NCBI RefSeq assembly: GCF_018350175.1
Contig: NC_058373.1
Coordinates: forward strand, 5,580,001 to 5,644,000
DNA length: 64,000 nucleotides
DNA from: Felis catus
Taxonomy: Eukaryota
Direction: 5' to 3'
The position numbers and the translations under genes are program-made. Positions 24,946-52,900 of the stretch are shown one piece after another; the first letter of the stretch is position 1, and every line of letters starts with the position of its first letter. Below the pieces are notes generated by a model that did no database searches, was not told where the DNA came from, and saw only the letters and a list, made by a program, of their open reading frames with translations.

Positions 24946-24996
24946 ATGGGGGGCTCGGGCAGTCGCCTGTCCAAGGAGCTGCTGGCCGAGTACCAG
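24946..24996 (+). CDS. CIB1: CIB1 exon 1 ([17 protein letters not shown])
   Basis: ATG 24946, donor CAG|GTGCGC. Confidence 0.93.
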
Positions 24997-27900
24997 GTGC
25001 GCGGGACGCCGGTCCCCGGGGAGTTTGCGCGCGGGCCTGCGCTGGGAGCGGGGTCCCGGGGCTGGGTACCGGGGCGGGCGGTAGGACGGGCGCGGCCTCC
25101 GGGAGGCCCGCTGAACCCCTCCCGTTTTGCTTTCCAGGACTTGACGTTCCTGACCAAGCAGGAGATCCTCCTGTAAGTGCCGTCTCGAACCTCAGCTCCC
25201 GGATCTTCTAGAGGCGACTTCGGGGGGCTCTGTCCACAGACGAGTTTAACAAAGGGTCCCCCAGGGGGAGGGACGGGGCCCGCGGCCGAGCAGGTGCCCG
25301 CGCCCCGGCCGCGAGCCCTCCCCGCCGGCTCAGGGGGCCCCGATGCGCACCGCAGAGCCACCCCGAAGCCTCCGCCCGGGCTGGGCGCTCCGGGGCCTGC
25401 GCTCCCTGGCTCCTGCGTTATCGAACTTCCTGCTCCAGCCCGGCGGGGGCTCGGCGGACTTCGCCTACCGGGAGCCCGGCCCCTCGTAACTTGACCTGAA
25501 TATATACAGTAACCGTTAACGCTTACTGAGCACTCGTCGTGCGCCAGCAACTGTGCGAAGTGCTTGCCTATATTACCTAATTCAATCCTTAGGAGGGAGG
25601 TGCGGGGGACAATGAATCAGGTTTCCGAAAAGTTTGTTTACTTGCCTAAGAGTATGCTCCAAGTGAGAGGATTTGAATTCGGGCTGGAAACCCCTTCCTA
25701 GCCGTGTGCCAGCTTTTTGTGGTGAAGGCGCTTGAGTGAGGCGATTCCTTGGCTTCTCTTGGCAAAAATAATCCCAGTGGGAAGGAGCTGGGGGCGGAGG
25801 AAGAGATCGTTTAGGTAGCTGCTAAAATGGAAGGCTTTGAGGAGCTGGAGATCCCTGGAGTGAAATGAAAGTGAGGTTTCGACTTTACTCTTTTCTCACT
25901 GTTTTTCAGGGCCAACTGCTGGCTCCTTCTGCACCCTCTCCATCCCTCTGGGAGCTCTAGAGCCAGTCCCAGTACAGTGCCTGGCACACAGTAGGCCCTC
26001 AGTAAATACCCATTGCATGAATGGACTCCCAGCCTGTAGTCTGGTGACATATCTCCCTTTGGCTTATGCCTGATGGCTGAGAAGCTCTGTGTATGTGGCT
26101 TAGCTTGTCACCTGGTTTATAATGGGTAACAAGGCGAGGAGTGGGGATGTGATACACACAGGAAGGTTTGCCAACAGGTTCCTCTCCTTCTGCCAGAGCC
26201 CACAGGCGGTTTTGTGAGCTGCTTCCTCAGGAGCACCGGAGCACGGAGGAGTCACTGCACACACGAGTGTCCTTGGAGCAGATCCTCAGCCTTCCAGAGC
26301 TCAAGGTGCCAGTCCCCCACCCTGCCTCTGCTATTCATCTTGAGATCATGTGGTCACTAGTCCCCCATTCTGGTCTTTCCTCCATTTAGTCCCAATTTCC
26401 TGGGGACAAGGGCTTTATCAAAATCACCCAGTGGAATTAACTAGAATGGTGCTTTTCAAACTGGGATTCTTGGACATATTATTGGAGAGTCAAGTAAGTT
26501 TTGTCCTTTATTATATTTTTTATTATTTTTTAATGTTTATTCATTTTTGAGAGAGAGACAGATAGAGTATGAGCAGGGCAGGGGGGCAGGGGGGGGGGTG
26601 CAGAGAGAGAGCAAGTCACAGAATCCAAAGCAGGCTCCAGGCTCTGAGCTGTCAGCACAGAACCTGATGCGGGGCTCGAACCCATGGACTGTGAGATCAT
26701 GACCTGGGCCGAAGTTGGCCGCTTAACCAACTCAGCCACCCAGGCACCCCTAAGTTTTGTCCTTTAAAAGGAGTTGAGGGGCGCCTGGGTGGCTCAGTTG
26801 GTTTAGCGTCCGCTCTTGATTTTGGCTCAGGTCATCTCACAACTTGTGAGTTCAAGCCCTGCGTCGGGCTCTGTCCTGACAGTGCAGAGCCTGCTTGGGA
26901 TTCTCTCTCTCTCCCTCTCTCTCTCTGTCCCTCCCCTGTTCTAGCTTTGTCTGTCTGTCTCTCTCTCTCAAAATAAATGAGCCTGAAAATAATAATAAAT
27001 AAATAAAAGGAGTTAAGTTTCTGTATTAAAGTTTGAGAAGCTCTATTCCAGAGGCCAAATGCCTCTCCACAGGGTTGCTGTGAAAATTTTTAGGCAAAGG
27101 GCCCGGCCTGGTGCCTATAACACAGTGAGTGTTCAAGTAAACGTGTTTTATAGTAACCAGCCCATCTTGTTCTCTGCTTAGGATGCTTTCATCTTCCTTC
27201 TCTGCCCCTAGGCCTGCTGTTGGGTCAAACTGACTCGGTTACAGCCGTCCCTGTCCCTTCCTCAGTCAGTTGGCTCTCCCACCCTCCGTGCTGGTCCCAA
27301 AACACTGAGCATGCTCTCCCGTGAGCCCAAGCTCATGGTACCGTGACCTACTCCCTCCAGTTCCTGGCAGGGTTTGAGGAGTGTGTGACCTGGGCTACAT
27401 CCCATGGTGTTCACAGAAGGCTCTCTTGCCTAGGCCAACCCCTTCAAGGAGCGAATCTGCAGAGTCTTCTCCACATCGCCAGCGAGGGACAGCCTGAGCT
27501 TCGAGGACTTCCTGGACCTCCTCAGTGTGTTCAGTGACACAGCGACTCCAGACCTCAAGTCCCACTATGCCTTCCGCATCTTCGGTGAGGGCCAGGAGCA
27601 GCCTGGCCTGACATGGCCTGCTCCCACATGGTCCTGGTGGTGGTGTTCCTGCTCGGGAGCCGGGGGTCTCTGTGGAGCCTTGGAACTCACACTGACCACA
27701 TACTTTCTGGCTTCCTGCGTCTGTCCATAGACTTCGATGATGATGGAACCCTGAACCGAGAAGACCTGAGCCAGCTCGTGAACTGCCTCACGGGCCCGGG
27801 CGAGGACACGCAGCTTAGTGCTTCAGAGATGAAACAACTCATTGACAACGTGAGTAGCCGGGCCGGGCCGGGCCAGGGAGCGGGAGGGGAGGGCTAGGAC

Positions 27901-28301
27901 TTGGCCTGAAGCTGTCCTTTCCCAGATCCTGGAAGAGTCCGACATCGATCGGGATGGCACCATCAACCTCTCAGAGTTCCAGCACGTCATCTCCCGCTCA
28001 CCAGACTTTGCCAGGTATGAGGTCACGGTCCCCCTGCGTTCTGGTTACCCCTGGGTCCCCGCCTGCTGCAGCTGGGCCTGGGATGTTGGGATGGGAGGTG
28101 GCAGCCGGGCTGAGAAGGCCCCAGTTCCTCTCAGCGTCTCAGGGCAGCTCTTCCAAAGGGGACGGACAGACGTGGGTCAGCCCATTCCAAAGGGTCTTAG
28201 GGAAGATGTGGGTAAGTTTGGGGTTAGTGTCTCCCCTCCTCTTCCAGCAGAAAACCCGAGCCACTTTTCTCTTGTTCAGCTCCTTTAAGATTGTCCTGTG
28301 A
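24946..28301 (+). CDS. CIB1: Calcium- and integrin-binding protein 1, complete spliced CDS (7 exons, 576 nt, 191 aa)
   Basis: Exons 24946-24996, 25138-25172, 26197-26305, 27434-27584, 27731-27849, 27926-28014, 28280-28301; myristoylation start [10 protein letters not shown]; EF-hand loops [12 protein letters not shown] and [12 protein letters not shown]; C-terminus SFKIVL*. Confidence 0.96.
25138..25172 (+). CDS. CIB1: CIB1 exon 2 ([11 protein letters not shown])
   Basis: TTCCAG|GAC...CT|GTAAGT. Confidence 0.93.
26197..26305 (+). CDS. CIB1: CIB1 exon 3 ([10 protein letters not shown]...LSLPELK)
   Basis: GCCAG|A...AAG|GTGCCA. Confidence 0.93.
26511..26750 (-). mobile_element. CanSINE, 16-bp TSD TAAGTTTTGTCCTTTA
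   Basis: TSD at 26495-26510 and 26751-26766. Confidence 0.9.
26778..27005 (+). mobile_element. CanSINE, TSD TAAAAGGAGTT
   Basis: TSD at 26765-26775 and 27004-27014. Confidence 0.9.
27434..27584 (+). CDS. CIB1: CIB1 exon 4 ([13 protein letters not shown]...HYAFRIF)
   Basis: CCTAG|GCC...G|GTGAGG. Confidence 0.93.
27731..27849 (+). CDS. CIB1: CIB1 exon 5 ([12 protein letters not shown]...KQLIDN)
   Basis: CATAG|AC...AAC|GTGAGT. Confidence 0.93.
27926..28014 (+). CDS. CIB1: CIB1 exon 6 ([18 protein letters not shown]...PDFA)
   Basis: CCCAG|ATC...AG|GTATGA. Confidence 0.93.
28280..28301 (+). CDS. CIB1: CIB1 exon 7 coding part (SFKIVL*)
   Basis: TTCAG|C TCC TTT AAG ATT GTC CTG TGA. Confidence 0.93.
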
Positions 28302-31207: not shown

Positions 31208-31950
31208 TCACACCACGGAGTCCCGGATCTCAGAGCCCAGGCGGACCCGGGGCCGGGGGCACACCGGGGACACCTCCACAAAGCTGTCCTGGATGCTGAG
31301 CGGCCTCTTCTCGGACTCCGTGAAGACGCGGGGCCCCGGGGGGCTGTCTGACAGGGCCTGGTAGCCTCGGTGGTCGAGAGGGGTGCTAGGGGGGCCTACG
31401 CCGTTAAGCGGCCGGGTCTCAGGTGGCAGCGCCGTAGGGCGGGTCTTGGGGTGCACACTGGCACACTCCCCCTGCTTCAGGAAGACTTTCATGCCGCCCC
31501 GGTGCCGGTAGAGGAAGAATAAAATCAGGAGCACCACAGCGAACACGAAGAGCGCGCACATCACCAGGAACTCGGTCCAGTAGGACTTGTCCGCACCCCA
31601 GCTGGCCTTGCCGCCGGCCGGCGCGCTCACCCGCGACGTGCTGATGACGACGGGCACGCCGCCGCTCCGGTCTGCTCGGTCCGCGATCAGGTCCTCTACA
31701 ACCTTTGGGCAGTAATTGGCCACCAGCTGCCAGAAGCCCTCCTCCAGCGACCAGCACTGGAACACCCCCAGTTCCTGCTGGCTGCCCACCAGCAGCAGGT
31801 CCCCAGTAGGTAACACGCGGCAGGAGGCCGAGGCGTTGACGGGGGCCCCGTCGTGGAGCCAGAGCCGGGTGGCCAGGTTGGAGAGGAGGGGGCAGGCCAA
31901 CGTGTTCACCGTGTTGGGCTGAAACTGGACCCGCTCACACGGCTTCTCGC
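31208..31950 (-). CDS. SEMA4B: SEMA4B last coding exon (Ig-like, TM, cytoplasmic tail)
   Basis: GTAG|GC GAG AAG...[26 protein letters not shown]...EIRDSVV TGA. Confidence 0.94.
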
Positions 31951-34900
31951 CTACAGACAGAAGACGCACGGGGTGAGGGGGGGCCCGGCATCCACGGTGG
32001 CCCCGAGCTCACCCGCCTCTCCCTGGACTGTGATCCTTGTACCATGATGGAAAACTCGGGGGACTCTGAGTCTGGGACGTGGACAGAAGGAAGGGCATTT
32101 ATACCCACCGTTGCCTGCAGAAGGCTTCTCAGCGGACTTGGCCCCCACCTCTCCAGCTCGGACAGGGCAGTTTACCTGTTAGTACAGGAGCCGGAAACCG
32201 GGCTGAGGACGTGTTGCAGAGGCCCCTGGCGTTCGCCCCCTCAATGTCCTGGATCCACGGCCTGGGGACCAAGAGACAGTCTGGGATAAGCCAGGAAACC
32301 ACTGTGAGCCTGCATCGCCCCTCCCCGGACCCCCCCCCCCCCCCCTCAGTGCAGCCAGGCCATCACGTGGCCCTGCAGACCCAGGCCTGGCCAAGGGCCT
32401 AGGGAGGCTCAGGGACCACCAGGACCAAAGCAGGAGTAAAAAGGCAGCTTCCCCATGCTGATTCCCCACCTGCAGGTTCTGAGCCAGCACCTCCTCTGTT
32501 TGTTTATACATTATCTATTCTAAATACAAGTTACCGTCACACTCCCCTGAATTACGAAAGCAATATGAGCTTTTAGAAAACATAAAACGTAATAAAAAAT
32601 AAAAGTCATTCTTTTTTCTAACCTGTTATAAAAATTTTTAATGGTTTTATTTATTTTTGAGAGACGGAGACAGAGCACGAGTGGGGGAGGGGCAGAGGGA
32701 GAGGGAGACACAGACTCTGAAGCAGGCTCCAGGGTCTGAGCTGTCAGCACAGAGCCCGACACGGGGCTTGAACTCGCAAACCTTGAAATCATGACCTGAG
32801 CCGAAGTTGGACGCTTAACTGACTGAGCCACCCAGAAGCCCCTTAAAAGTCATTCTTGATATACTCAGAAAACCTAAAAACTCAACCAAGTACAAAGGCT
32901 GAAAACACTACGGAAGCCACACACAACCCACCATCTGGTAACCGTGATGGGGAGTATTTGTGGTGCATCCTTCCAGGTGGACATGTGTGTACTCGTATGT
33001 GATTCTCTGAAATATAAAATCGGCACCAGGTCTCCATGTGTGTGAAGCAAGGTCACTACAAGGGGGACAGATTCCATCTTTATTTAAAATACATGTAGGG
33101 GCACCTGGGTGGCTCAGTCAGTTAAGAGCCAGACTTTGGCTCAGGTCATGATCTCGGGTTTGTGGGTTCGAGTCTCACATTGGGGTCTGTGCTGACAGCT
33201 CGGAGTCCGGAGCCTGCTTCGGATTCTGTGTCTCCCTCTCTCTCTGCCCCTCCCTCCCTCACTCATGCTCTGTCTCTGTCTCTTTCAAAGATAAACATTA
33301 AGACATTAAAAAAAAATAATAATAAAATAAAATACATGTATTTTGGAGCGCCTGGGTGACTCGGTTGGTTGGGTGTCCGACTGCGGCTCAGGTCATGATC
33401 TCACAGTTTGTTGAGGTTGAGGCCCACGTTGGGCTCTGTGCTGACAGCTCGGAGTCTGGGGCCTGCTTCGGATTCTATCTTCCTCTCGCTCTCTGCCCCT
33501 CCCCCACTAGCGCTCTCTCTCGCCCTCGCTCTCTCTCTCTCTCTCCCCCTTGCTCTTAAAAAAACATTAAAAAAATTAAAATAAATAAAACACATGTATT
33601 TGTATTTTACATATATAGAGAAAAGTCTGGGAGGCTATATTTCCATCAAAATCTCACTGGGATTCTCTCTAGGTGGTGGGATTAGCGACAGTTTTTATTT
33701 TGTTTACGCTTCTCTCCACTCTTTAGGTTTTCCGTATGAACATTTTACAACCTTAGTTCTCTTGAAAGCCATTTTTAATGGGTTTTGTTAACGGATTGTT
33801 GCGTAGCCCTTATTTTTTGTTAAAGAAAAATTTGCACGCTAATTTTTCATTGCTGCGACACTTCCACTACCGAATGGGTAAGGCAAACATAATTTCTTGC
33901 CTAAGCCAGAACCCTTTTGAGAGTCAGAAGGGTAATGTTTAAAAAAAAGAAAAAAAAAAGGAGGGCCTGTGGAAGGTGCTCTGAGGCCAAGGGCACAGGA
34001 TGGACAAGTGGGACAATGGGAAGGGCCTGCAGAAGCTCTCACCTGGAGGCCGCCTCAGGTTGGTAGAGGCTGACGTGTCTGCAGCTGGAACCGCTCCAAG
34101 CACAGTAGGGGTCCCGGGCGAGGACACAGTCCCCACAGCTCTGGTACAGGCTGCAGTTGGCCACAGGCACCTGGACTACGCCTGAGTGGGAGGCAGCGTA
34201 GAGCAGTCCCTGCACAGACACGGGGCGGGGGGTGAGAGGCGGGCACGGGCGCCCGGGGCCGCCTCGCACAGCTGCACCTGGCTCGCGTGCCCACCAGAGC
34301 CACTCCCCAGGGGGCCTCCTCTTACGCCCCCGGGCACCCCACTTTCCGTTGGCTCATGCCACGAGACTGGAACTTTCCATCCTGCAGGCGCCAGGGAGAA
34401 GCTGGCTGGGGCCCGCTTATCGGTAATGAGGGGCACCCGGACGTGCTCCCCGGGCTCCTCCTCCAGCTCACCCTGCTGGCGTCCAGCAGCAGGTTCTGCA
34501 CGGGCTGTCCTGGCGAGAAGATCTGGAGCTCCTCGACGATGTGCACCCTGGGGCCCACGCCCACCGCCTTGTGCAGCCGGCCATCGCCTGGAACACGGAC
34601 AGCGCTCAGGCCCACAGCCCCACAGCCGCGTCCCCCGAGCCCGAGCCCGCCCCGCCGCGGGCACTTACTGGTGCCCAGGAAGAGCACGTCGTAGGTGTGG
34701 TGCAGGCCGGCCACGCGGTGCACGGCCACGCGCTGGTAGCGGGCGCGGGGCTGCAGCAGCAGCAGGCGGCTGCGGACCTGCCCGTCCATCAGGAAGTGGT
34801 CCTTGAGGAAGTTCAGCACACGGTCTGGGAGTTGCAGGGACGAGCTGATCTTCCTCTCCCGGGCACTGTCGGTGATGCACTGAAGGAGAAGGCGGCGGCG

Positions 34901-37900
34901 TGAGGCCGGTGCCGCTTAGAGCGGCCAGCCGGGCGGGAACCGCGTGGCCGCCGCCGGGATTGCCAGGCCCCGCCCCCGCGGTGGACGGCAGGGCCACCCG
35001 CCCGCCCCGCAGACGCCGCTGCACGTCACCCGCGGTGCTGCAGGGAGCCAGCACACCGATCGGGAGGCCCCGGGGCGAAGCCTGGGTGTGGGGCACCCAG
35101 GGGCCCTGGCCGGCAGGGTTCCCCTCCCTGCCCAGGCCCCTCGCCCTCCCCCAGGCCTCAGGAAGCATGCCACGCTTCTGCGGCTTCAGCAACCTTTCAC
35201 CAGTGCCGGAAGGAAGCCTAGGCTAACCAGGGTCTCCTAGTGCGGGGGGCATGAAGGTGCCCTCCCAGGGCCCCAGGTGCCCACGACGGTGACGGCTCGG
35301 GGACGCCCTCCGTTGGCTCTGCTTCCTCCTCTAGCTTTCCTATTCCCTCACGGTGCTTCCTGAATCACCTCCCTTATGAACCCCCGGCACTCAAATCCCT
35401 GTTTCAAGGTCCAATGGCAACAGGCTGCCATTATGGGCAGCCTATTAAGCTGGATGGAAAGAAGGACGATATCCCCACGGCCGGGCCGCGCGTCACTCAA
35501 CAGCTAGAGGAGGAGCTCACAGCTGGGCAGGGGAGAGACGCGGGTGCAGGGACAATGACAGAAGCGTGCACTAAGCGTCCCGATGGGCACACACCTGCTC
35601 ACTCTAGATAGGGCTACGGCATTCCAGCATTCGTAGCCACGTGTAACCCAGTAAGACAAGCAGGCCTGGCTCTTGTCCCCACGTTCAAGAAGAGGAAACA
35701 GGCTCAGAGAAGCCCAAGGAGCCCAGCACGGTGTGGGGACCTTTGTCATCCGCACCCCACCCGGGTGCAGAGAGCAGCACTTACCGCTCCGGGACGGGGT
35801 GTGGGCACTGGGTGGGTCACAGTGTACCACTGCTGTGTCTCCCGGTTCACCTCCTTGTACAGGCCGTTGAAGGCCTTCTGCACGTCTTTCATGGTGAAGA
35901 CACACAGGGCGGAGCCCTCCGTGGTCCCCCTGTGCCTACCGTGGAAATGGCTGGATTAACCCAGGAGCCCCGGGGCTCCGCACGAGGCCGGCTTAGCCCC
36001 AAGGCCGGCTTTGGGCCCCAGTCCCGTCACCCCCCAGCCGTCCCATCTCTGATTAGGTCCCCGGGGGCCGTACCACTGGGATGTGAAGACCCCATAGAAG
36101 AGGGTGTCCCGCCAGTCCTGGGGGCTGGGGCTCAGCGTGAAGACGTCCTGCAGCACGTTGAACGGGAAGCCGTCGTCGGGCCGCGAGCAGAGCAGCTGGG
36201 CCTTGAGGAAGGACGTCCAGCGTTGCTGCAGGACCCGCTCGCCGCCCTCGTCACCCTGGGGGAGGGGGAGAGACACTGGGCTCAGCCTGGGCGGGGGCTG
36301 GGAGGCAGGGGGAGCCTGGTGCCCCTTGCGGCCCCTCCCCAGTGGTAGTGGTAGCTGACCCAGACCCTGGGAAGGGCAAGCCACGGCTGGGGCCGAGTTC
36401 CATTTAAAAGCAAGAAGCGGGGCGCCCGGGGGAACTCAGTCGGTTGAGCGTCCGACTTCGGCTCAGGTCGTGATCCTGAGGTTCGTGAGTTCGAGCAACG
36501 CACAGGGGCTCTGCGCTGACAAGTGCGGAGCCTGCTTGGGATTCTCCCTCTCTCCCTCCCCGACTCGTGCTGTCTCTCTGTCTCAAAATAAATAAAGAAA
36601 CTTTAAATATACAAAATAAATAAACCAAATCAAGAGGACTTGACGGCAATGTCCAGGAGGCCGGCCGAGTAAAGGACAGTTCCCTCACCGTGGAACAGCC
36701 AGAAACAGAGCGGGGTCTGCCTACACGCAGGGAAAGAGGTCACGATTCCCAGCAAACACCTAAATACCCGCATTACAGTAGAACTCTTGCTTTGTAAGCG
36801 GTGTTTTAATAACGCAAATACGTATATATTTACGCATATACAAAGAAAGATTCCCAAGGGGCGTTCTAAAACGTTAACAGCGTGGTCACTTGTGGTGAGG
36901 CAGCAGGGTTCTAACGCTAACCCGGTCCACATCTAGTTGTTGCGTACCACGCTCCTGAGAGCTTTCTGTGGATGGGTTTTACCCAGAGCTTTCTGTGGAT
37001 GGGTTTTACCCACGCAACATCACTGAACAGACGAGGACGCTGACTGAGAGGGCACGGGACTTGCCCAAGGTCACAGGACCCAGTGGGGTTTGAACCGAGG
37101 CAGCCTGGTTTGAGACTATGCTCTGGATCGCGATGGTCCGCTGCCTCTTTACCTTGTAAGTGACTGTTGTGCACACTTTTCTGTATTTCCACATTTTCTT
37201 AAATAGGAAAAAAACCATTAAGAGCTATTCTCATTTAAAAGGAGAGAGAGGAAAGCAGTTAGCCAAGCTGTTCCTCCTGGAGGACAGGAGATGCCATCTC
37301 CTGGCGTTTCCTGATCCTGTACCCGAGGAGCCTTTGGGGTCTCCGGGGCGGCCCGTCCCTCACCTTGCAGATGCGGGCGATGCGGGACACGATGGTGTTC
37401 TCGAAAAACTCAAACTCCTGGCCAGTCTCGCTGAAGAAGAAGTAGATCTTGTCATCGTCCCCCTGCAAACTGCCCAGGCTCTCGGGAACGTAGGCTGAGG
37501 CCACAAACGCTGGGTCTGGGGGCCGACGGGGAGCACGGAGTCAGCCCGGGCATCCCGGACAGGCGGGAGAGTGTTCTCGGCCCTGCAGGGAGAGCGCGCC
37601 CCTCCCTGGGCTCCGGGGACTGCCCACCGGGTGCGTGGGGAGGACTTCACCTTGGAGCCAGTTGAGGGAGCTCTCGGTCTTGGTCGGGCGGAGGCTCTGG
37701 CTCCGGGAGATGGCCGGGTCATTGCCTTGGAAGCTGCTGACTGTTCCAGTGTACAGCTCACCGTCTGCCAAGAGAATGTTCCCATGGGAATGGCCCCTCG
37801 GCACGGCCCCTTCCGCCCGCTCAGGGCCCGGAGTGACCCCAGCACTGCCCACCGCGCCTGAGGTGGACAGGGAAGAGAGCGGCAACTGGGAACAGCCAAA

Positions 37901-40900
37901 GCAAGGGCAGCCAAGGGTCGCCCCGTGCCCCCTGGGAATCAGCATGGCGTGAACCCACCAGCTCAGGCCTGGGGGCCACCCCCCCACCCCCTCACCCCCC
38001 CCCCCCGCCCCGCACATGGAGCCTCAGTGAGCCCCTCCTGCCACTCTGCCCCCACCACTCACCAACCACCAGGGCCGTAGACTTGAAATTGGGGTCAAAG
38101 GGACATCGGCCCTTGCCATCCTCCAGGAGGATGTTCCCCGCCTCGTCCTGTGCCAGAGTGAAGTTCTCCACACTCTGCAGGGAAGCAGACAGGAGAGCTC
38201 AGGGGCTCACCAAGGAGCCTGCGGCCCCGGAGGGAAAGGAGGGAGGTGTGCCCCAGAAGGCAGCTCTGTGGGGGGAGAGGTGGGAGGCAGACCACCCTCA
38301 TCTCTGCACCGGGGGCACAGTGCTGGCACCGCCTGGCAGTGGCCCTGTGTGGTGGGCCCTACCGGCCCCAGGGGACACAGAGGAGACTAGACGGTACTCG
38401 AAGGGGCAGCAATGTGATTCACACCCGGGCACATCTGACTCCCGTGCTGCAACCCGCTGCCTCAAAGTGCCGCCCTCCGCCACAGGCGGGTGAAAAGCAG
38501 AAACGCAAGAGTGTGTGCGAGGAGGGGTGCATGAGGTGGGCTCCGGAGCTGAGTGAGGGCAGGGGACGGCTAGAGGAAGCAAGAGGTGGTGTCCTGGGTC
38601 AGCCAGGGTGCTCACAGGCACCCCTCCTTCCCCCTGCAGGCCAACCCGGCCACCAGATGTGGGGCGGGGCCTCAGGGCTCTCAGAGCCCACTGTTCCCTA
38701 GAAGCTTGGCCCTGGGTCCTGCCCTTGACCAGGGATCGGTGCTGGAGAACGGCTCCTGGCGCGGAGGGGGACACTCACGATGTAGGTGCACACGGGGCTG
38801 AAGGCTGCTGTGCCGCAGGTGAACAGGTGGCTGCTGTTGAGCGGAAGGAGGATCTTCACGTAGTTTTGACAGTCGCGCTGGGGGAGGAGGGAGGAGGTTG
38901 TCAGGCCCAAGCATGCCACCAGGGGGCACCGCCAGGCCCTCACCACCAGTTGGTGGGGGCGGGGGCGTGGTGGGTAAAGCCTCTGCTCTCGGGTGCGCCT
39001 CAAATCCCAGAGCAAAAGAGAACCCAGCAGCCTCCCAGGGCAGGGTAGACTGAGGACCACGGACAGTGTGCACTGGAGGGGAACCCAGGGGCTCCACTAG
39101 ATCTGTGTTCCGGAAACTTCTCTCCAGCCCGAGAGTGAAGGCACAGGATCCCTTCCTCTTGCGCTGTCTCGGCCCCTGAGGGTCTTCTTTGGAACCTCGG
39201 GGAAAACCTCTGGTCCTCCCCACCACCTCGTGAGGAAGCCACAGCCCAGAGCAGGACCCTGGACCCCAGACTCGTGGATTGCCTCTGTAAGGGTGTCTGA
39301 CGGGTGTCTCCGACCAAGCATCCTGTCGTTCCCCCAAAACTTCCTCCTCTCAGACCTCTCCCCCTCAGCTGTTCAGGCTCCAAAGCTCACGGCCGTCAGC
39401 CCCAACTCATCCCTCACACCTCCCATTTCCCCACCAGGAAATCCTGGTGGCTCCATCTTCAAAATACATCCAAAATTTGACCACTGTTCACTCCCTTTAC
39501 TGGTACCACCCCGGTCTGGTCTCCCTCCCTCTGCCCCTGCCCCAAGGAGACCACTCTCCACCATGGCAGCCAGAGGGACTCTTCCTTTTTTCTTTTTCTT
39601 TTTTTTTTTTTTTAAGTTTATTTACTTTGAGAGAGAGGGAGAGAGAGCAGGGGAGGGGCACAGGGAGGGAGGGAGAGTCCCAAGCAGGCTCTGCACTGAC
39701 CACGCGGAGCGTGACACGGGGTTCTGTCCCATGAACCGTGAGATCGTGACCTGAGCCGAAACCAAGAGTCGGATGCTTAACCAACTGAGCCGCTCAGGTG
39801 CCCCCAGAGCAACCCTTTCAAAACAGATGCCACCATGTCACTCCCCTGCCCAGCCCTTTGGTGGCTCCCCAAACACCTCGCTCAGAGTAAGTCCAGTCCT
39901 GCCCCTTGTCCAGGAATCCCACAGCTAACTCCCTCAGCACTGTCCAGTCCTGATGCAAATGTCCCTTTCTTAACGAGCTGTGGCCTGACTACCTGTTCAA
40001 GCGGCTCAGTTTTGCCTGTTGCTCTTTCTTCTTTTTCACTGTTACATTGCCAGTGTCTAAAAGTACTTGGGCGCAGGGGCGCCTGGGTGGTGCAGTCTGT
40101 TAAACGTCCAACTCTTGATTTCGGCTCAGGTTGTGATCTCAGTTCGTGAGTTCGAGCCCCACATTGGGCTCTGTGCTGACAGTACGGGACCTGATTCTGA
40201 TTCTCTCTCTCTCCCTCTCTCTCTCTGCCACTCCCCCGCTCATGCTCACTCTCTCTCGAAATAAATAAATAAATTTAAAAAAGAAAAAAAGGGGGGGCCA
40301 CTGGGGTGGCTCAGTCGGCTGAGCATCCGACTTGGGCCTAGGTCATGATCTTGCCATTCTCCAGTTTGAGCCCCAGGTGGGGCTCTGTGCTGACAGCTCA
40401 GAGCCTGGAGCCTGCTTCGGATTCTGTGTCTCCCTCTCTCTCTCTCTCCCTCAAAAATAAAAATAAACATTAAAAAAACTTTTTTTCGAACAAAAAAAAG
40501 TACTCGGGCATGGACCAAGTGCTTAATAAGTAAACGTTTGTCAAATAAAAGAAGTCACGGGCAGTCAGGACTTGAACTTGTGTCTGAACTCCACTCCGGT
40601 GCTCTCTCCCCTTCACCTTAGCCACCCTCTGCTGCACGCAGGGTAGGGAGGTCTCTGGGAATAGTGGGGAGCCCTCCAGGAGAACTCCCAGGCTGGACCA
40701 GACCCCATACGCAGTGGTCTGGCCAAAACCCCACCAGGATCTGTCAGCTCTGCTCCATCACACCACCTGTGGGGGGACAGGACTCCCACCCGACCCAATT
40801 GTTGCTCTTGCTGGAAGCTGACATTTATTTGGCACTGATTAGGTGCCAGGTGCCTCTTATGTATCAGCTCGCTGAATCCTCACAGCAAGACCTGAGATAG

Positions 40901-43900
40901 GTAGGCATCACTAGCCCCACTTTACAGGTGGAGACACTAAGGCTCAGAGAGGCAAATCTCCTCATTCAAGGTCACGGAGATAACAAGGACAGGGCCAAAC
41001 CCAGGTGCGGCCACCTCGGAAGCCTACGCTCTTTCTATCACAGCGGCTCCCACATCCTCCCTCCGTGCCGGGTCCAGTGCACCTCTCCAGCCTTCCTTCA
41101 GCCCAGGTGGCCTCCAGGTACAAGCTCACCTGTGGGTCCTTGCCCTTGAAGCTGCACTGCTGTTTCCTGTCTGCATCTGCGCTCCACAGCAGCTGCAGGA
41201 AGAAAGAAGGGGAGTGTGGGAGGGGAAGTGGAGGATGTACGTGCCCAGCACCACCACCACCACCCCCCCACCCGTCTGCATCGTCTTCACACCCAGAGGG
41301 TCAGTTTTTCTGTTTTCCCCTCTGCCATCCTCTGCCCAGCCTGGCCAGCCCCCGGCATCATCTCACCTCCTGGTACTCCCCGCCTGGCAGGAAGCTGGAA
41401 CTACTGTTGAGAGCAAAGAGAGCCTCTCGGGCACCCACGTACAGAGTCCTGCCATCCCTGCTCAGCAGAAGGGCCGTGTAGTTGGAAATGTTTTCAGCTT
41501 CAAATCTGAGGAACGGCCGCTTTTCAGAGCCTGGGAGAGGAAGACAGACATAAACCTGGGGGCCACACCTCCCACGAGAAACCTCTTCTGCCAACCTCTA
41601 GGACGGGCCGATCTGACGGTGAGTGAGCAACGCAGCACACGGCAAGGGGCTGGGGACAGGGGGTCAGGCTTAAGGGGGAACGCCATTCCTGGACTCTCCA
41701 ACATTATAGAAGAAACAAAGGCACGGAGATGAATGTAAAAGAACATTTATCATGGCACTGTCCCTATGAATGAAAAATTGGAAACAACCTAAGTGTCCAA
41801 CCACAGGGGACTAGATGAAAACACATCACTGTTAATACTCCACTCAATGGAGTATTATGCAGCTGGGAAAAATGATGTCGTGTTAGAAACACCAGGAAAA
41901 CAAGCAAACAGAAGCATACAAGAAAGTCATGGTCAGATATGAAGCAAACGAAGATAGAGCACGTAACAGAACAAAAGAGAGGGAAGGAGGTTGAACACCC
42001 GCCTTTGAGTGGCATCACACCCAAGGAGAAGGATCTACAGGGCACAGCCCACCCCTACCCCTGCAGCGAACCTGCCCCCTGCCCCTGCAGCGAGCCTCAT
42101 TTAAAATGGCAGAGGGGGGCGCCTGAGTGGCGCAGTCGGTTAAGCGTCCGACTTCAGCCAGGTCACGATCTCGCGGTCCGGGAGTTCGAGCCCCGCATCA
42201 GGCTCTGGGCTGATGGCTCGGAGCCTGGAGCCTGTTTCCGATTCTGTGTCTCCCTCTCTCTCTGCCCCTCCCCCGTTCATGCTCTTTCTCTCTCTGTCCC
42301 AAAAATAAATAAGCGTTAAAATGGCAGAGGGATGCAAACATGGGGCACCGGTCTTTACCTCTTTGCTCCCACTCAGTCACTCGTGGAAGATTCGGGATTT
42401 TAAATAGAATGTAAATTGTCACTGACCCTGACCTCGGGAACTTGAGTGAACAATAGACACACGGTGATGCTGGCTGCCAGGGGAGTTAAGGGAAAAGTGG
42501 AGTCTCTATCTTCTTCTGAGAGCGAAGAGGGCCGCAAGATAATGCCAGTGGTTAATGCAACAAGAAACTGAGGCTCAAGTATAAAATTTTTCGGGGCGCC
42601 TGGGTGGCTCAGTCGGTTGAGTGTCTGACTTTGGCTCAGGTCATGATCTCGTGGCTTATGAGTTCAAGCCCCCACGTGGGGGCTCTGTGCAGACAGCTCC
42701 AGAGCCTGGAGCCTACTTCGGATTCTGTCTCTGTCTCTCTCTGCCCCTCCCCCACTCATGCACTGTCTGTCCGTCTCTCAAATATAAAAAACATTAAACA
42801 ATTTTTTAATATAAAATTTTTCTTTAAGTTTATTTTATTACTTTTGTAGTAACCTCTACCCCCAATGTGGGGCTCGAACTCACGGCCCTGAGATCAAGGG
42901 CCGACTGAGCCAGCCGGACACCCCGAAGTATGATATTTTAAATTACAGAAGTAACCCAATACGGTGGTAGAAAAACAGAGGAGGTGAAGGGTAATGGGAT
43001 AGAGAAGGCCTTATTTTTCTCAGCAGCCAATCAGTAAATTAGACAAGCCAAGAAATAGTGGTGTAAGGCACTTCACCACGTGGAGGAAACCACTGTATTA
43101 ACAAAAGGTCTAAATGACGAAAAGGTGTCCCTTTCTCCAGGCCTGGGGCTGGGGAGGACAGAGGCATTTGCTGCTTTTCACGGTAAGTACTTCCCATACT
43201 TAAAAACAAATTATGTGCACATGTCCTGGATATAAACTTTAACTCTTTCTCATTGTTATAAAGTATGCAACACAAGGAAAGATTCTAATGATCTCCCACC
43301 AAGTGAAGATGAAGGTTATAGAATAGTATGCCTAGTTAGAGCCTATTTTTTTTTGTGTGGGAAAAATATAAACAGAAAAAAAAAAAAAATCCAGAAGGAT
43401 GAACCACACAGGGTGCTGAAAACTGGTATCCCTGGTGGGAGTAGAGGTAATTTTCTTTTCCTTTTTCCTTCTCATTTTTTGGATTCTACAACAAGCCGGT
43501 TCCTCTTGTGTAATGGGAAAGAAATAGAAGAAAAAGAAAGAAACACACATACCTATCCAACCAGGGTACCGTTTGTGCTTTGAGTGACTCATGGATTTGA
43601 AGAGAAATTATTCTAAAAATTCTAAGCAGCCGATAAGAAAAGAAAAACAGGCAGAACTCAGCCACCCTGCCCAAGCTCAGGTATCTCCTAACTGACCAGT
43701 CGGTTATGACCACGCACGCAAATATCGTCTCGTGAAGCTGAGGAAGCAAAAAATGCAACATGCCAACAAAGCAGTTGTGAAGATGGCTTTCACGTGGTGA
43801 GTGTTTTTACATACCCCCGGCCTGGCTCCACAAAGGGCAAGAAAATAAAGAAAAGGACACAGTGAAACAGAAACACTAAAATCAGGAGTAGGGAGAACGC

Positions 43901-46900
43901 ACACATCTGAAGAAAACACCTAAGCCAGAAAGTAAGGGCATAGTCACATAAGCAGGTCCTGAGAGATCTTCACAACAGCTACTAGGGATGGGGTGCCCAT
44001 TTAAGGCTGAGCCTCCTGGTGGCCAGGGAGAAAAGGGAAATGAAGTTACCTTGTTCTCACTATCCAAGAGGAGGTACACATAGCGGCCTTTCTGGAGAAA
44101 CTAAGCTTTCTGCCTCACCACTAATGCTAAAGGAAACCCTCAGGTGGGACGTTCCAGCAAAGCTCACGGGACATGGGATGGATAGCAGCCCGCCAGCAAA
44201 CAGGATGACGGAGTTCCCAAGGCTGCTCCTCACAATGGCTCCTGGTGAGGGAAGGTGATGACACAAGGTGGCCAGTGCAGGAACGTGTGTGGCTCTGCAG
44301 CTAGGAGTCTTGTCATACAGCAGAGTCTAAACTGGGGCGGCACTGGGAATTCATGGGGTAAGTCCTGCCTCACGTCTGGTGTCCAAACTCTGGCACTGAG
44401 ACCGCAGGACAGCTATGGTCCGGAGAGGTCAGGGCCTCTCTTTGAACTCTCAAGTCCAGAATCGCCTGAGACTCTAGGTTTTTTGCCTCAAATGCCCAAC
44501 TCCTCATCACTTACCAGCACTCTACACACTGGGAGACCCAAAGAAAGTTTCTAGTCCTAATCCCCCAGTTCTCCCAACCATGAAATTTCCAAACGCAACA
44601 GGGTCCAATCATGCGGCTTGTATCGTGCGGTGATGAGCCTTTAGGAGCCCGACATTTCCACGCTCTGCTCCTAGGAAGTCACGCCGGTAAAGGGACCCCT
44701 CCCACTGGCCAGCAGAGGCCTGCTCCCACTCCCGGGAGGGTGCAAAGTCGCCCAGGTCTGACCTCCAGGTCCAGGCCTGCTCCAGAGGTGCTGCCGCCGC
44801 TGACCTGGAATGGCCTGAGAACGTGCATTTACGAATTGACTCCCAAAGACCATGAAGGATACCACGTAGGTCCCCTGTCGGGCGGCGTAGGCGGCCTGAC
44901 CTTTAGCGGTCCCCTACATTTCATGGGGATAACAAAGAAAATACAACCCCCAGCGGTCTCACGAGGAGTCAGAGAGTCGAGGGCAAACATCTTCCACGTC
45001 CCCTTCATGGTTTTCTGAAAGCAAGGGCTGGCTCAAATTTGCCAACGCTTATCTGCCCTCCCAGGAGGCTCGTTTCCCGCGGGCGGGGCCTGGAAGTCTA
45101 GGCAGGAGGCTGTGCTTGGAATCCGTCCAGAAACAGAAACACCAAAGGTCAGAGATAAGGTTGCCGTCCAGGTGGCAGCTCGGCCCCGCTCCGGCCTGGA
45201 AGGGAGAGGAAATCTGCCAAGGGTCACGTAGACAGAGCGCAGCCAGGCTGGAAGGACAGCCAGGGCGCCAGCTGCTCGAGGACCCGCCGGGCTGCACCTC
45301 CAGTCATGTGGGGAACACGGTCATGGAAATGGCAGACAGAAAATGCCTTGACATGTGGGTGAGGGGCCCCCTATACTATCCATTCCCCTTCTGGGCATTC
45401 TCCTCCTTCGTCCCCCGCCCTGAGCCTCTCACACTCAAAGCCATGGCGTCCTGAAGGCCTTGCTTTCTGACGACCTCCCACTTGCCCTGTGGACTTCGTC
45501 AGGGCTAGTCAGTGGGGCTGCCTCCCCAACTGGGAGCCTCGACGAGACAGAGATGAAGAGGACAGACTCAGGGGCGCCTGGGTGTCTCAGTCAGTTAAGC
45601 GCCCAACTTCGGCTCAGGTCATGATCTCACGGTTTGTGGTTTTGAGCCCCACGTCAGGCCCTGTACTTCCAGCTCGGAGCCTGGAGTCTGCTTCTGATTC
45701 TGGGTCTCCCTGTCTCTGCCCCTCCCCTGCTTGTGCTCTTTCTCTCTCTCTTGAAAATAAATAAAACGCTGGGGGGCCGGTTATATTATTAAGGCCAGAT
45801 TCTTGCCACAAATAGTGTAGTTTTAGCTACAGACTAAAGTCTGCTCTAGTATTAGTAAGGGATATTATTTTAATTTAGGAAAAAAAATTAAAAAGAGAAA
45901 AATAAATAAAACATTTCTGGGGCGCCTGGGCAGCTCAGTCAGTTGAGCGTCCGACTTCGGCTCAGGTCACGATCTCACGGTTCGTGGGTTCGAGCCCCAC
46001 GTCGGGCTCTGTGCTGACAGCTCAGAGCCTGGAGCCTCCTTCGGATTCTGTGTCTCCCTCTCTCTCTGCCCCTCCCCCGCTCACACTCTGTCGCTCTCAA
46101 AAATAAAGAAAAACTTTTTTTTTTAATTGAAAAAAGAAAAAAAAAAAAAAAGTACAGACTCAGGACTCAGAGACCTGGGTGCCAATACTGCCCCTGTCAC
46201 ATAGGAGCCACCTGCCACCAGGATAAGCCACTTAACATCTTGGAGCCTCACTTTCCTTATCTGGAAAATGGGGATAATAACCCCTTTCCTCATAGGGTTG
46301 TTATGAAAAGAAAGGAGACCGTGTGTGTAAATAACAGACATAATAACCCACGTCTACCGAGAGCTTTACTCAGAACAGCCCTGCACACGTTAGCTGAGTG
46401 TTGGCACGGCGTCTGGCACGCGATCAACACCTGAGTGGGTCAAAACCAGAATCCAAAAGCCCTGCAGGAAAATCCAGCCCAGCAAGAGCTGCCAGAGGAG
46501 CAGGGCTGTTTGGGAGAGTTGGGCCTCCCTCGTCCTCGAGGGTAAAAACAACTCACACGGGGTGGTTTCTAACCTAGGTCTGTCGCGGTCACTTGGGGGT
46601 CTCACCAGGGACCAAGGGCTCTGTAACCGGACCGGTGTACGTGTTGCATGCATGAGCTGGTTCCCGCCCAGGTGCCTGGGGTCACCTCCAGAGTCACCGC
46701 ACAGACGTCTGTCTGTGTGGGCCCTGCCTGGGCTTGCCTGTGTGCATGTGTGTGTGCGTGTGTCTGTGCACCCGACCACCAGGCTTGTCCGTGCTTGTGT
46801 GTTCGCTCCGGGCTGCTTTTGGTGTAGAGGTGACTGGCAGGGTGTTTGTGTTCTCCTTTCCCTGGAAGCCTTAACCATACCTCAGGGTCAGCCTTAGCTT

Positions 46901-49900: not shown

Positions 49901-52900
49901 TCCAGGGAAAGGCCCTAGATTCAAAGAGGGCAGCCTAGAGGTCCTGAAGCCTCTCGCTCACAGGAGTGCTGTCTGCGAAGCACTTGCCCCTGCTCTGCCC
50001 CCTCCCCAAAGCACTGACCACTCAGTCCTGCAAGCTCAGGGCCCGGACAGAAGTGCGGCGGCTGAAAAGTGCCACAGGGAGGCAAGAGAGAGGTCACAAG
50101 GGCTGCGTAGGGAGCCTCGATGCCCACGTGGGAGCTCTGACTTTCATCACTGACCAGCTGTGCAATCCGAACAGGGACCCGCCGTCTCTGACAGGGAGCC
50201 CTCACCGCAGCTGCTGCAAAGACCACATAAATGCAGCACGTAGAAGTGCCGAGCCCTGCTCCCAGGTTAGGGGGTCACAGTCAGGACTGACCCTACCCGT
50301 GCCCCCAACTCTTCCTACCGTCTTCCTTCCTCCCCACCCCTGCTCTGACTAAACACCCAGCACTCTGGCCACCTCAGACGCCCACTGATGCAGGAAAGAG
50401 GAGACGAGGGCAGGTGGGGCTGCAGCCGCCTGGAGGCAGGAGTCCCTCTGACCAGGTGGCTCCAGCTCAGCCCCGGGTGCATTTCGCTAACTGGAATGCG
50501 GGCCCAGCCTTGCCAGATCTCCAGAAGAGCTGGAAAACTGGATTTTTACTTAAAATGTCCTGAGCTTTATTTTTTTTTTAATTTTTTTTCAACGTTTTTT
50601 ATTTATTTTTGGGACAGAGAGAGACAGAGCATGAACGGGGGAGGGGCCGAGAGAGAGAGAGACACAGAATTGGAAACAGGCTCCAGGCTCTGAGCCATCA
50701 GCCCAGAGCCTGACGCAGGGCTCGAACTCACGGACCGCGAGATCGTGACCTGGCTGAAGTTGGACGCTTAACCGACTGCGCCACCCAGGCGCCCCAAAAT
50801 GTCCTGAGCTTTAAAGATCAGCAACTAATTAAAATTTCCTACAACACTTGGAGGCCAAAGAAAATCTATCTCCAGGCTGGCTCTGGCCTGCTGACCCCCC
50901 CTCCCCCACCAGTTTCCAAACCTGTGTCTCAGATGTTTGCCCCCCCCCCGTCTCCTGCACACAACATTCCTGGCCAGGTGTGCTAAGCGGGCTGTACTTG
51001 CAACTGTGGCCACACCATCAGGGGCTCAGCCCGGGCCCTTGCTCCCATCCAGGGAGTGACCTCAATATATCTCTTTACCAGATGGAAATACATAACCTAT
51101 CAATTATTCCAGGGCTGAGCCTGGGCCATTTTGCTGCTTTTGTACACTTCACAACTGAAGTACTGGAGAGAATGTGGTTCTCGAGTCAGAGAGCTGTGGC
51201 CCAAGGCTTGACCCCAAACCTTTCTAGATGCGTGACCCTGACGACGTGAGTTGGCTTCTCCAGGCCTCAATCCCCTCATACGTGCGAGATGGAACATTAC
51301 CACCTCCAGAGCCCGGCACACAGCGGGTGCTCCGTCCTGGGAGCGTTCATCAGTGGATGAACAAGGCAGGCCAAGAAAGAGGGGGGCTCATTTGGCCCCT
51401 GTTCAAGAGTTATGATAACATGAGGGGTTTCTGTCTACCACCCCCACTGAAAAGCCCTCACCACGGGCCGCCAACCTCTCCGGACCCTACTAAATGTCAA
51501 AATGGTCTTTTCAGAGGACCCATGAGTCAGACCAGAGAGATCCCATGGAGAACAGGTCAGATTCCAGGGGGGCAGAGCCACATGCCTTGGACAAAATACT
51601 TCACCTCTCGGAACCTCAGCTGTCTTATGTTATAAATAGGGATAACATCACCTATTGTGTAGGTGACACAAGAAAACTAAAAGCCCGGTGCCCACAGTAG
51701 CTCTATACTTATTACCTTCCACCTTCTTCTAAGCACTAAACTCTGCAGCATACACACGAGGACGCCAGCTGTGCCACCTGAGGGTGGGGGGTGGTCCTGC
51801 CCCATACTGTGGAGATGGTCACATAGGAGTGGCAGCTAGAAGATGACCAGGGAGACTGCACAGGGCTAGGCAGAGAAAACGCTTGCCTGTGGCTTTGAGA
51901 ATGGCTGGAGATGGAGTAGAGCCTTTACGGGACCTCGGGCGTCTGTCCTAAGACAGCTACCACAGTGTAAGCCACGCTCCATCCTGGACAGACGGGGGCC
52001 CGGACGGGAGGATAGAATGCAAGGAGGAGGGGTGGGGAGGGCTGGGGAGGGTCCGGAAGAAGCTCCTCTACCCACCAACCCCAGGGAGGGCCCCATCAGA
52101 GGCCTCTCGGCCAATCCTGAGATCCTGGGCACCCATGGCGGTGTGGGGGTCGGGCCACGGCCTCTAAGAAGGGGACAAAGGAAAAGAGTGATTGACAACC
52201 TAACCCGAGTCCAGCCTTTTCTCCAGGCTCTGCGTCATCCTGCCTCCCTTGTGTGGAGGATGAACGTGCAGGTGTCTCCAGATGTGCCCCCAAAGTTGTG
52301 CAAGCTTAGAGTTTTGCTGGGCTGGCATACAGGCATTGCAACACTCTGCTGAATGTGGGTTATGCACAGGGCAGCGTGGAAGCGGTGAGGGGCAGGGGGC
52401 AGGGAAAGGTGCGGTCCGGCCCCAGGCAGGGGAGGTGCTTGGGGCAAAGAAGAATTTCAAAGAGCTGAACCAAGACACTTGAAAAGTGCCCCCAATTCAG
52501 CAGGAACCCGCCGGCCCCACACCAGAGGGCAGGATCTGCACTATCCCATCCCCTGGCGAGGGTCTGCGTGTAGGCCGAGCTCGGGGTCAACGAAATTGAT
52601 GCAAATAACCTCACCAAGCAAGGCAGGCAGGGAATTTCCACCAGAGAAGAGAGGCCGCTACCTTCTTCCCGGGGACACAGCACGTGCCAGGCATGGTGCC
52701 AAACGCTTTCCACACGTTATTTCGCGGAACCCTCCCAGAGCCCCGTGAGGAGGGTCCTGCCGTGACTCCCAGCCTGCCCCAGGTGGTGCAGTGAGGAGCC
52801 AGGCCAGGCTTCGAGGCCGGGCTATTAGCGCCCATAGTTGCAGCTCTTTCCACTTGGCTCCGAAGGGCCATGAACACGCCAGGCCACAGGCCACAGCTGA

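What the first reader, a model, noticed from the sequence alone, without database searches (positions are those of the whole stretch)
37364..41530. Hidden +1 frame across SEMA4B exons 2-7 gives exactly 211 codons on a back-spliced circle, but is broken by one TGA in this species
Seen: coding exons 2-7 total 704 nt. A strong-Kozak ATG (GGGATGG, 41455) in exon 2 opens the +1 frame ([39 protein letters not shown]...). I checked every codon pair through exon 7 and found one stop only: TGA at 38858-38856, created by the main-frame GTG AAG (Val-Lys). Ignoring it, the frame crosses an exon 7-to-exon 2 back-splice junction as AG|G CTC TGA and closes at exactly 211 aa. Recalled knowledge: a human circSEMA4B-encoded peptide named SEMA4B-211aa has been reported, and human SEMA4B has Ile (NYIK) at this position. 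Inference: this frame is that peptide. In this felid it would be split into a 57-aa piece and a 109-aa piece (second ATG at 38119), giving a natural test of whether the circRNA peptide is conserved or an incidental open frame. Inverted repeats flank the block (SINE 36420 + versus SINEs 42820 - and 50570 -; MIRs 36940 versus 46150), which could promote circularisation.
Basis: partly seen in the sequence, partly recalled or inferred. Interest (0 to 1): 0.75.

Follow-up and report, generated by a model that had tools for sequence, protein, structure and literature searches.

The report
Broken cat copy of circSEMA4B reading frame
The out-of-frame reading frame that in humans is said to yield the circular-RNA protein SEMA4B-211aa is present in this carnivore's SEMA4B gene with the same geometry but cut by one stop codon, and everything testable here suggests it is a chance open frame, not a conserved gene.

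Summary
The core observation holds exactly. SEMA4B exons 2-7 on the minus strand sum to 704 nt. The +1 frame opens at ATG 41455 and holds one stop, TGA 38858-38856. Ignoring that stop, it closes after the exon 7-to-exon 2 junction at codon 212.

The link to the human peptide is now shown, not recalled. The paper (PMC9482637) gives exons 2-7, 704 bp, a 636-nt ORF and an antigen peptide. That antigen matches this frame at 15 of 16 residues, and the cat stop is the single mismatch. The published junction siRNAs match the cat junction.

The frame looks incidental:
- Its product is 66% Ser/Ala/Arg/Thr/Pro.
- In the published human oligos it differs from cat three times as often as the main frame.
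- Twenty further silent changes would each add a stop.
- Its shortage of stops is marginal (P about 0.05-0.1) and is expected from how the human circle was chosen.

Inverted SINEs do flank the block; the MIR pair was not detected.

Untested: whether cats make the circle, and how other mammals read.

Side finding: the paper says SEMA4B shares the antigen segment, but the antigen is out of frame with SEMA4B.

The parts
41367..41530 (-). SEMA4B coding exon 2 (164 nt). Its first base is the acceptor side of the putative back-splice.
   Evidence: AG/GT borders and an open main frame. Its start GCTCTGAA equals the 3' half of the published human junction siRNAs.
41130..41192 (-). SEMA4B exon 3 (63 nt)
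38779..38877 (-). SEMA4B exon 4 (99 nt). It holds the stop that breaks the frame.
38063..38174 (-). SEMA4B exon 5 (112 nt)
37651..37764 (-). SEMA4B exon 6 (114 nt)
37364..37515 (-). SEMA4B exon 7 (152 nt). Its last base is the donor side of the putative back-splice.
   Evidence: Its end CCGCATCTGCAAG is identical to the 5' half of the published junction siRNAs.
41453..41455 (-). ATG that opens the +1 frame, in context GGGATGG
38856..38858 (-). TGA in the +1 frame, made by main-frame GTG(Val) AAG(Lys). It is the only stop inside the 211-codon frame.
   Evidence: It lies at the position of Ser in the published human antigen.
38117..38119 (-). Next ATG in the +1 frame. It opens a 109-aa ORF that crosses the junction.
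41524..41526 (-). TGA that closes the +1 frame after the exon 7-to-exon 2 junction (AG|G CTC TGA)
   Evidence: The human siRNA sequences have the same bases.
38847..38877 (-). Exon-4 part of the bases that correspond to the published antibody antigen. The exon-3 part is 41130-41146.
   Evidence: the +1 frame reads RARTHSATVKTT*RSS. The main frame over the same bases reads [17 protein letters not shown].
36073..36255 (-). SEMA4B exon 8. It starts in phase 0 straight after exon 7, which fixes which frame is the semaphorin frame.
   Evidence: Pfam Sema domain, E = 7e-6.
36401..36624 (.). Carnivore-type SINE in intron 7 (intron 7 = 36256-37363)
   Evidence: blastn against the other SINE copies
42803..42943 (.). 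Truncated SINE fragment in intron 1, inverted relative to the intron-7 SINE, 1.3 kb from exon 2
   Evidence: 64 nt at 72% identity, E = 5e-5; duplex energy -99.6 against -65.8 for shuffles (z = -6.8).
50566..50795 (.). Full SINE in intron 1, inverted relative to the intron-7 SINE, 9 kb from exon 2
   Evidence: 234 nt at 70% identity; duplex energy -236 (z = -17). It pairs much better with the SINE at 42098-42312 in the same intron: 95% complementary, -419.

Best explanation
Bases 37364-41530 (minus strand) are ordinary coding exons 2-7 of semaphorin 4B. They encode the N-terminal part of its Sema domain.

The +1 reading frame over them is the true positional counterpart of the human circSEMA4B ORF (SEMA4B-211aa). 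It is an incidental overlapping frame with no detectable selection of its own.

Why the frame is exposed: its second codon positions are the third positions of the semaphorin codons. Every silent change in SEMA4B therefore changes the +1 peptide, and about one silent change in twenty would create a stop.

What happened here: the Val codon at 38859-38857 reads GTG before an A, which gives TGA. If a 704-nt circle is made in this animal, it could encode at most a 57-aa peptide from the conserved ATG and a 109-aa junction-spanning peptide from ATG 38119. It could not encode the 211-aa product.

Shown here: the geometry, the identity of the frame with the published one, the stop, and the composition and divergence pattern.

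Inferred: absence of selection, and that the stop arose by neutral drift.

Not tested: back-splicing and translation in this species.
For: Geometry and stop.

Same frame as the human peptide:
- Antigen match 15 of 16, with the stop as the only mismatch.
- Same exons, 704 bp and 636-nt ORF.
- Same junction bases.

Which frame is the semaphorin frame: the main frame continues in phase into exon 8 and into exons that Pfam calls Sema and PSI. The last exon is 91% identical to a protein named Semaphorin-4B.

Signs that the +1 frame is incidental:
- The product is 66% S/A/R/T/P. It has 2 Glu, 1 Asp, 3 Lys and no Tyr.
- In the published human oligos that lie inside the ORF, 6 of 22 +1 codons differ from cat, against 2 of 23 main-frame codons.
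- 20 of 415 main-frame-silent single changes would add another +1 stop. With a lineage-level silent divergence of roughly 0.15-0.2 (my own rough figure), about one stop is expected by drift.
- The shortage of stops is marginal, P = 0.047 to 0.11.
- The human circle was picked from a database because it had a long ORF, so some shortage is expected from that choice alone.
Against: - Exons 2-7 carry fewer +1 stops (2 in 234 codons) than exons 8-14 of the same gene (17 in 547), and fewer than the codon-permutation mean.
- All three Leu-Asn pairs use CTC, which avoids TGA.
- The start ATG, its Kozak context and the closing stop are kept between cat and the published human fragments.
- The human-cat comparison rests on only about 38 codons taken from oligos and one antigen.
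- No other mammal could be examined.
Confidence: 0.8

Rival explanations
1. SEMA4B-211aa is a real, selected protein made from a circular RNA in most mammals. This lineage lost it through one nonsense change that leaves SEMA4B itself intact. That would be a natural knock-out, perhaps with the 57-aa or 109-aa pieces keeping part of the function.
For: - Weak shortage of +1 stops in exons 2-7 relative to the null and to the rest of the gene.
- The ATG, its Kozak context and the closing stop are conserved.
- The paper reports FLAG-tagged product and p85 binding in human cells.
Against: - The composition is typical of out-of-frame GC-rich sequence.
- The +1 frame differs from the human fragments three times as often as the main frame.
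- The paper reports no mass spectrometry.
- Its antibody also lights up 92-kDa SEMA4B, which cannot contain the out-of-frame antigen.
- Translation from overexpressed circRNA vectors is known to be confounded by linear transcripts (PMC7544230).
Confidence: 0.08
2. The stop is not real or not effective. The G at 38857 could be an assembly error or a minor allele, or the TGA could be read through. The animal would then still make a full-length product.
For: Nothing positive. The base cannot be judged from the main frame, because GTG and GTC both encode Val. No reads could be laid.
Against: - The window has no N and the surrounding exon is clean.
- GTG is the commonest Val codon in a gene with GC3 of 0.77-0.87.
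- I saw no readthrough or selenocysteine signal, but I did not search for one formally.
Confidence: 0.05
3. No exon 2-7 circle is made in this species at all, so the frame is never exposed outside the linear mRNA. This is compatible with the best explanation and is not exclusive of it.
For: - The only inverted SINE close to exon 2 is a truncated fragment with a modest duplex energy.
- The full inverted SINE at 50.6 kb has a much stronger partner inside the same intron.
- A literature search found no cat circRNA catalogue that mentions SEMA4B.
Against: - Cross-intron pairing is clearly above shuffles (z = -6.8 and -17).
- The splice sites and exon sizes are identical in layout to the human circle.
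Confidence: 0.35

Closest known systems
Human circSEMA4B (hsa_circ_0000650) and its reported product SEMA4B-211aa (PMC9482637)
   Same: - Same host gene and the same six exons.
- Same 704-nt length and the same junction bases.
- Same start position implied by the 636-nt ORF, the same reading frame (antigen 15 of 16) and the same closing stop.
   Different: - The frame is cut here by TGA at the residue that is Ser in the human antigen. The longest ORFs are 57 and 109 aa.
- Existence of the circle and any translation are untested in this species.
Other reported circRNA-encoded proteins, such as FBXW7-185aa and SHPRH-146aa (from my own knowledge; cited as references 45-46 in PMC9482637)
   Same: An ORF that spans a back-splice junction and ends shortly after it.
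   Different: As I recall, those use the host gene's own start codon and reading frame, so most of the product is host protein sequence. This ORF runs wholly in the +1 frame and shares no residues with SEMA4B.
Dual-coding genes with a selected overlapping frame, such as INK4a/ARF and GNAS XLas/ALEX (from my own knowledge)
   Same: Two frames lie over the same exons.
   Different: Those show conservation of both frames across species. Here the second frame is broken in one species, diverges faster than the main frame, and has out-of-frame composition.

Membership tests
Orthologue of the human circSEMA4B ORF (SEMA4B-211aa) | Built from SEMA4B exons 2-7 with a total length of 704 nt | tested here: met
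   Six exons with AG/GT borders sum to 704 nt. The paper states exons 2-7 and 704 bp.
Orthologue of the human circSEMA4B ORF (SEMA4B-211aa) | Same reading frame as the published peptide | tested here: met
   The published antigen matches the +1 frame at 15 of 16 residues. The other frame's best match is 5 of 16.
Orthologue of the human circSEMA4B ORF (SEMA4B-211aa) | Same back-splice junction sequence and same stop just after it | tested here: met
   siRNA sense strands from the paper's supplement against the cat exon 7 end plus exon 2 start: 21 of 21 and 20 of 21 bases. The single mismatch lies after the TGA.
Orthologue of the human circSEMA4B ORF (SEMA4B-211aa) | Uninterrupted 636-nt ORF (211 codons plus stop) | tested here: not met
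   TGA at 38858-38856. The longest ORFs on the circle are 109 and 57 aa.
Orthologue of the human circSEMA4B ORF (SEMA4B-211aa) | The circle is actually formed (back-splice reads, RNase R resistance) | not testable with these tools
Orthologue of the human circSEMA4B ORF (SEMA4B-211aa) | Cap-independent translation of the ORF | not testable with these tools
   This needs experiments. The paper's IRES coordinates are only in a figure.
Class 4 semaphorin gene SEMA4B (host gene) | Sema domain followed by a PSI domain in the same frame, and a SEMA4B-type C-terminal exon | tested here: met
   Pfam Sema on exons 8, 9 and 10 (E = 7e-6, 5e-15, 3e-18) and PSI on exon 12 (E = 1e-9). The last exon is 91% identical to Semaphorin-4B of the gray whale.
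Conserved overlapping (dual-coding) reading frame | Second frame open in orthologues | tested here: not met
   It is broken in this genome. Other species could not be fetched.
Conserved overlapping (dual-coding) reading frame | Fewer stops in the second frame than codon usage predicts | tested here: inconclusive
   P = 0.047 for the ORF part and P = 0.11 for all 234 codons with gene-wide codons.
Conserved overlapping (dual-coding) reading frame | Second-frame protein conserved at least as well as neutral sites would allow | tested here: inconclusive
   6 of 22 +1 codons differ against 2 of 23 main-frame codons, in the published human oligos. This points against constraint, but the sample is small.

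The most novel reading that the evidence does not exclude
SEMA4B-211aa is a genuinely selected circRNA-encoded protein in other mammals, and felids carry a natural knock-out of it. The change leaves the host semaphorin untouched, since Val stays Val whichever third base is used. That would make cats a ready-made system for separating the functions of the circRNA peptide, the circRNA itself and the host gene.
Probability: 0.07. Interest if true: 0.6.

Novelty: already known. Interest (0 to 1): 0.3.

Why it matters
SEMA4B-211aa is widely repeated in reviews as a tumour-suppressing protein made from a circular RNA; 88 papers in the library mention the circle or the peptide. Whether such peptides are real genes or chance frames is an open dispute (PMC7544230; bioRxiv 10.1101/2020.12.10.418848).

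This window adds two modest but concrete points:
- The frame is not intact in at least one mammal, and it behaves like neutral out-of-frame sequence in the little that can be compared.
- The antigen used to raise the only antibody lies in the +1 frame. The paper explains the antibody's 92-kDa SEMA4B band by a shared segment, and that explanation cannot be right. The antibody evidence for the endogenous peptide is therefore weaker than stated.

Neither point is surprising to a sceptic, and one species is not a test of conservation. The multi-species alignment that would settle it is easy to run.

Tried and rejected
I worked beside the stretch, on exons 8-14 and the introns. Local translation, counting and folding of the stretch went on.

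2. Orthologue DNA. I did not scan the metagenome collection. Only one JGI protein appeared among the hits, and host-derived contigs there could be human.

3. P0007. From memory I take this hit to be the C-terminal part of the human protein. It was printed once with two others and then not used, compared or searched.

4. Further protein searches. Two more word searches could have reached full-length orthologues and shown Val or Ile at the critical residue. I left them out because the residue does not fix the third codon base.

5. The joined exon 2-7 model. It was built only inside local scripts and sent to no search tool. The pieces of the +1 peptide have no single reference, so they were not folded or scanned.

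6. Literature. A search for a cat circRNA catalogue or a rodent circSema4b found nothing usable.

7. A correction to my own reading. A more sensitive comparison showed a truncated inverted fragment at 42803-42943, next to a direct full copy at 42592-42798.

8. The MIR pair 36940/46150 gave no alignment better than E = 0.26.
Full report
**What is in the sequence**

On the minus strand, 37364-41530 holds six exons with canonical AG/GT borders:
- 41530-41367 (164 nt)
- 41192-41130 (63 nt)
- 38877-38779 (99 nt)
- 38174-38063 (112 nt)
- 37764-37651 (114 nt)
- 37515-37364 (152 nt)

They sum to 704 nt. One frame is open through all 704 nt and has no Met. It runs on in phase 0 into the next exon (36255-36073) and into exons that Pfam recognises as Sema domain and PSI repeat. 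The last exon (31211-31969) is 91% identical to a protein named Semaphorin-4B. The host gene is therefore SEMA4B, and these are its coding exons 2-7.

**The hidden frame**

The +1 frame was checked as follows:
- It has an ATG at 41455-41453 in the context GGGATGG.
- It has one internal stop, TGA at 38858-38856, made by main-frame GTG AAG.
- On a circle that joins 37364 to 41530, it reads AG|G CTC TGA and ends at 41526-41524.
- Ignoring the internal TGA, that is 211 codons plus a stop (636 nt).
- As the sequence stands, the frame gives 57 aa from ATG 41455 and 109 aa from ATG 38119.
- The circle carries only six ATGs, and 109 aa is its longest ORF.

**Is it the published peptide?**

Yes, and this now rests on the paper and not on recollection.
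- PMC9482637 says circSEMA4B (hsa_circ_0000650) comes from exons 2-7, is 704 bp, carries a 636-nt ORF for 211 aa, and has the junction inside the ORF.
- The paper prints the antigen used for its antibody, RARTHSATVKTTSRSSC. The cat +1 frame reads RARTHSATVKTT*RSSF. That is 15 of 16 identical, with the stop as the only mismatch. The best match in the remaining frame is 5 of 16.
- A Ser codon ending in the A of AAG must be TCA.
- The junction siRNAs in the supplement match the cat exon 7 end plus exon 2 start at 21 of 21 and 20 of 21 bases. The single mismatch lies beyond the TGA.

**Conserved gene or chance frame?**

Four things could be tested without other genomes.

1. *Stop density.* Permuting synonymous codons within exons 2-7 gives a mean of 3.47 +1-frame stops in the ORF part, with P(0) = 0.004 and P(<=1) = 0.047. 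Drawing codons from the whole gene gives P(<=2) = 0.11 for all 234 codons. The same null fits exons 8-14: 17 stops observed in 547 codons, 15.9 expected. Exons 2-7 are therefore somewhat poor in +1 stops. The human circle was chosen from a database because it had a long ORF, and cat and human share ancestry, so a shortage of this size needs no selection.

2. *Exposure to silent changes.* The third positions of SEMA4B codons are the second positions of the +1 codons, so every silent change alters the +1 peptide. Of 415 possible silent single changes in the ORF part, 20 would create a further stop. With a silent divergence of about 0.15-0.2 on one lineage (my rough figure, not computed here), about one stop is expected by drift. 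One is seen.

3. *Divergence.* The published human oligos that lie inside the ORF cover 22 +1 codons, of which 6 differ from cat. They cover 23 main-frame codons, of which 2 differ. The sample is small. The direction is what an unconstrained overlapping frame gives.

4. *Composition.* Ser, Ala, Arg, Thr and Pro make up 138 of the 210 residues. There are 2 Glu, 1 Asp, 3 Lys, 1 Asn, 1 Ile and no Tyr. This is the usual look of out-of-frame translation of GC-rich coding sequence.

Together these make an incidental frame the best reading. I put it at about 0.8.

**Circularisation signals**

Intron 7 (36256-37363) holds one carnivore-type SINE at 36401-36624.

In intron 1, four full SINE copies lie in the same orientation as it: 42098-42312, 42592-42798, 45571-45765 and 45919-46111. 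These cannot pair with it.

Two elements in intron 1 are inverted relative to it:
- A truncated fragment at 42803-42943, 1.3 kb from exon 2.
- A full copy at 50566-50795, 9 kb from exon 2.

Best duplex energies with the intron-7 SINE are -99.6 (z = -6.8 against shuffles) and -236 (z = -17). The 50.6-kb copy pairs far better with the 42.1-kb copy inside the same intron: 95% complementary and -419. That pairing would not bring the back-splice sites together.

The MIR pair was not detected.

**A discrepancy in the paper**

[quoted passage not shown] The antigen is encoded in the +1 frame. Over the same bases the semaphorin frame reads [17 protein letters not shown]. The two proteins share the nucleotides, not the residues.

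The 92-kDa band therefore needs another explanation, such as cross-reaction. This weakens the antibody evidence for an endogenous 23-kDa product. The paper reports no mass spectrometry. General doubts about translation read-outs from circRNA over-expression vectors are on record (PMC7544230; bioRxiv 10.1101/2020.12.10.418848).

**What could not be done**

The existence of the circle in this species and the base at 38857 remain unchecked.
- The joined exon 2-7 model was used only in local scripts.
- One protein hit (P0007) that I take for the human C-terminus was not used.

**Verdict**

The identification with SEMA4B-211aa is correct.

The most likely meaning is ordinary: a chance open frame over semaphorin exons that drift has closed in this lineage.

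The interest lies in what this says about a much-cited human claim. It is one broken species plus an out-of-frame antigen, so the interest is modest (0.3). A genuine lineage-specific loss of a functional circRNA protein is not excluded. I put it at about 7%.

Noticed in passing
window 41130-41146 and 38847-38877 (minus strand): The antigen of the published anti-SEMA4B-211aa antibody is encoded in the +1 frame. The semaphorin frame over the same bases reads [17 protein letters not shown]. The paper's statement that SEMA4B (92 kDa) is recognised because it shares this segment therefore cannot hold.
   Followed up: yes
window 31211-36255 against 37364-41530 (minus strand): +1-frame stop density differs within the gene. 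It is 17 stops in 547 codons for exons 8-14 (as the codon-permutation null predicts) and 2 in 234 codons for exons 2-7. All three Leu-Asn pairs in exons 2-7 use CTC AAC, which avoids TGA. The effect is weak (P about 0.05-0.1) and unexplained beyond ascertainment.
   Followed up: partly
window 39585-40474: Intron 3, inside the putative circle block, holds three carnivore-type SINEs. Two are in tandem (40076-40290 and 40279-40474). One is inverted to them (39585-39804), giving a 66-nt inverted repeat only 271 nt apart (pair I7). The 40.1-40.4 kb copies are also inverted relative to the intron-1 SINE at 50566-50795, which could favour a smaller exon 2-3 circle.
   Followed up: no
window 27613-28301 (+ strand): ORF fragments reading ...[22 protein letters not shown]... 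and ending ...SSFKIVL look like exons of the EF-hand protein CIB1. It would be convergent with SEMA4B, as I recall for the human locus. Recognised from memory only, not searched.
   Followed up: no
window 55400-57100 and 24000-26000: Two GC-rich blocks (GC 0.64-0.67) with long spurious ORFs on both strands. The first is probably the CpG-island promoter and exon 1 of SEMA4B. The second probably belongs to the neighbouring genes.
   Followed up: no
protein P0007: Among the last-exon hits, one cluster of 44 member sequences looks from memory like the human SEMA4B C-terminus. It was printed once and then left aside.
   Followed up: no
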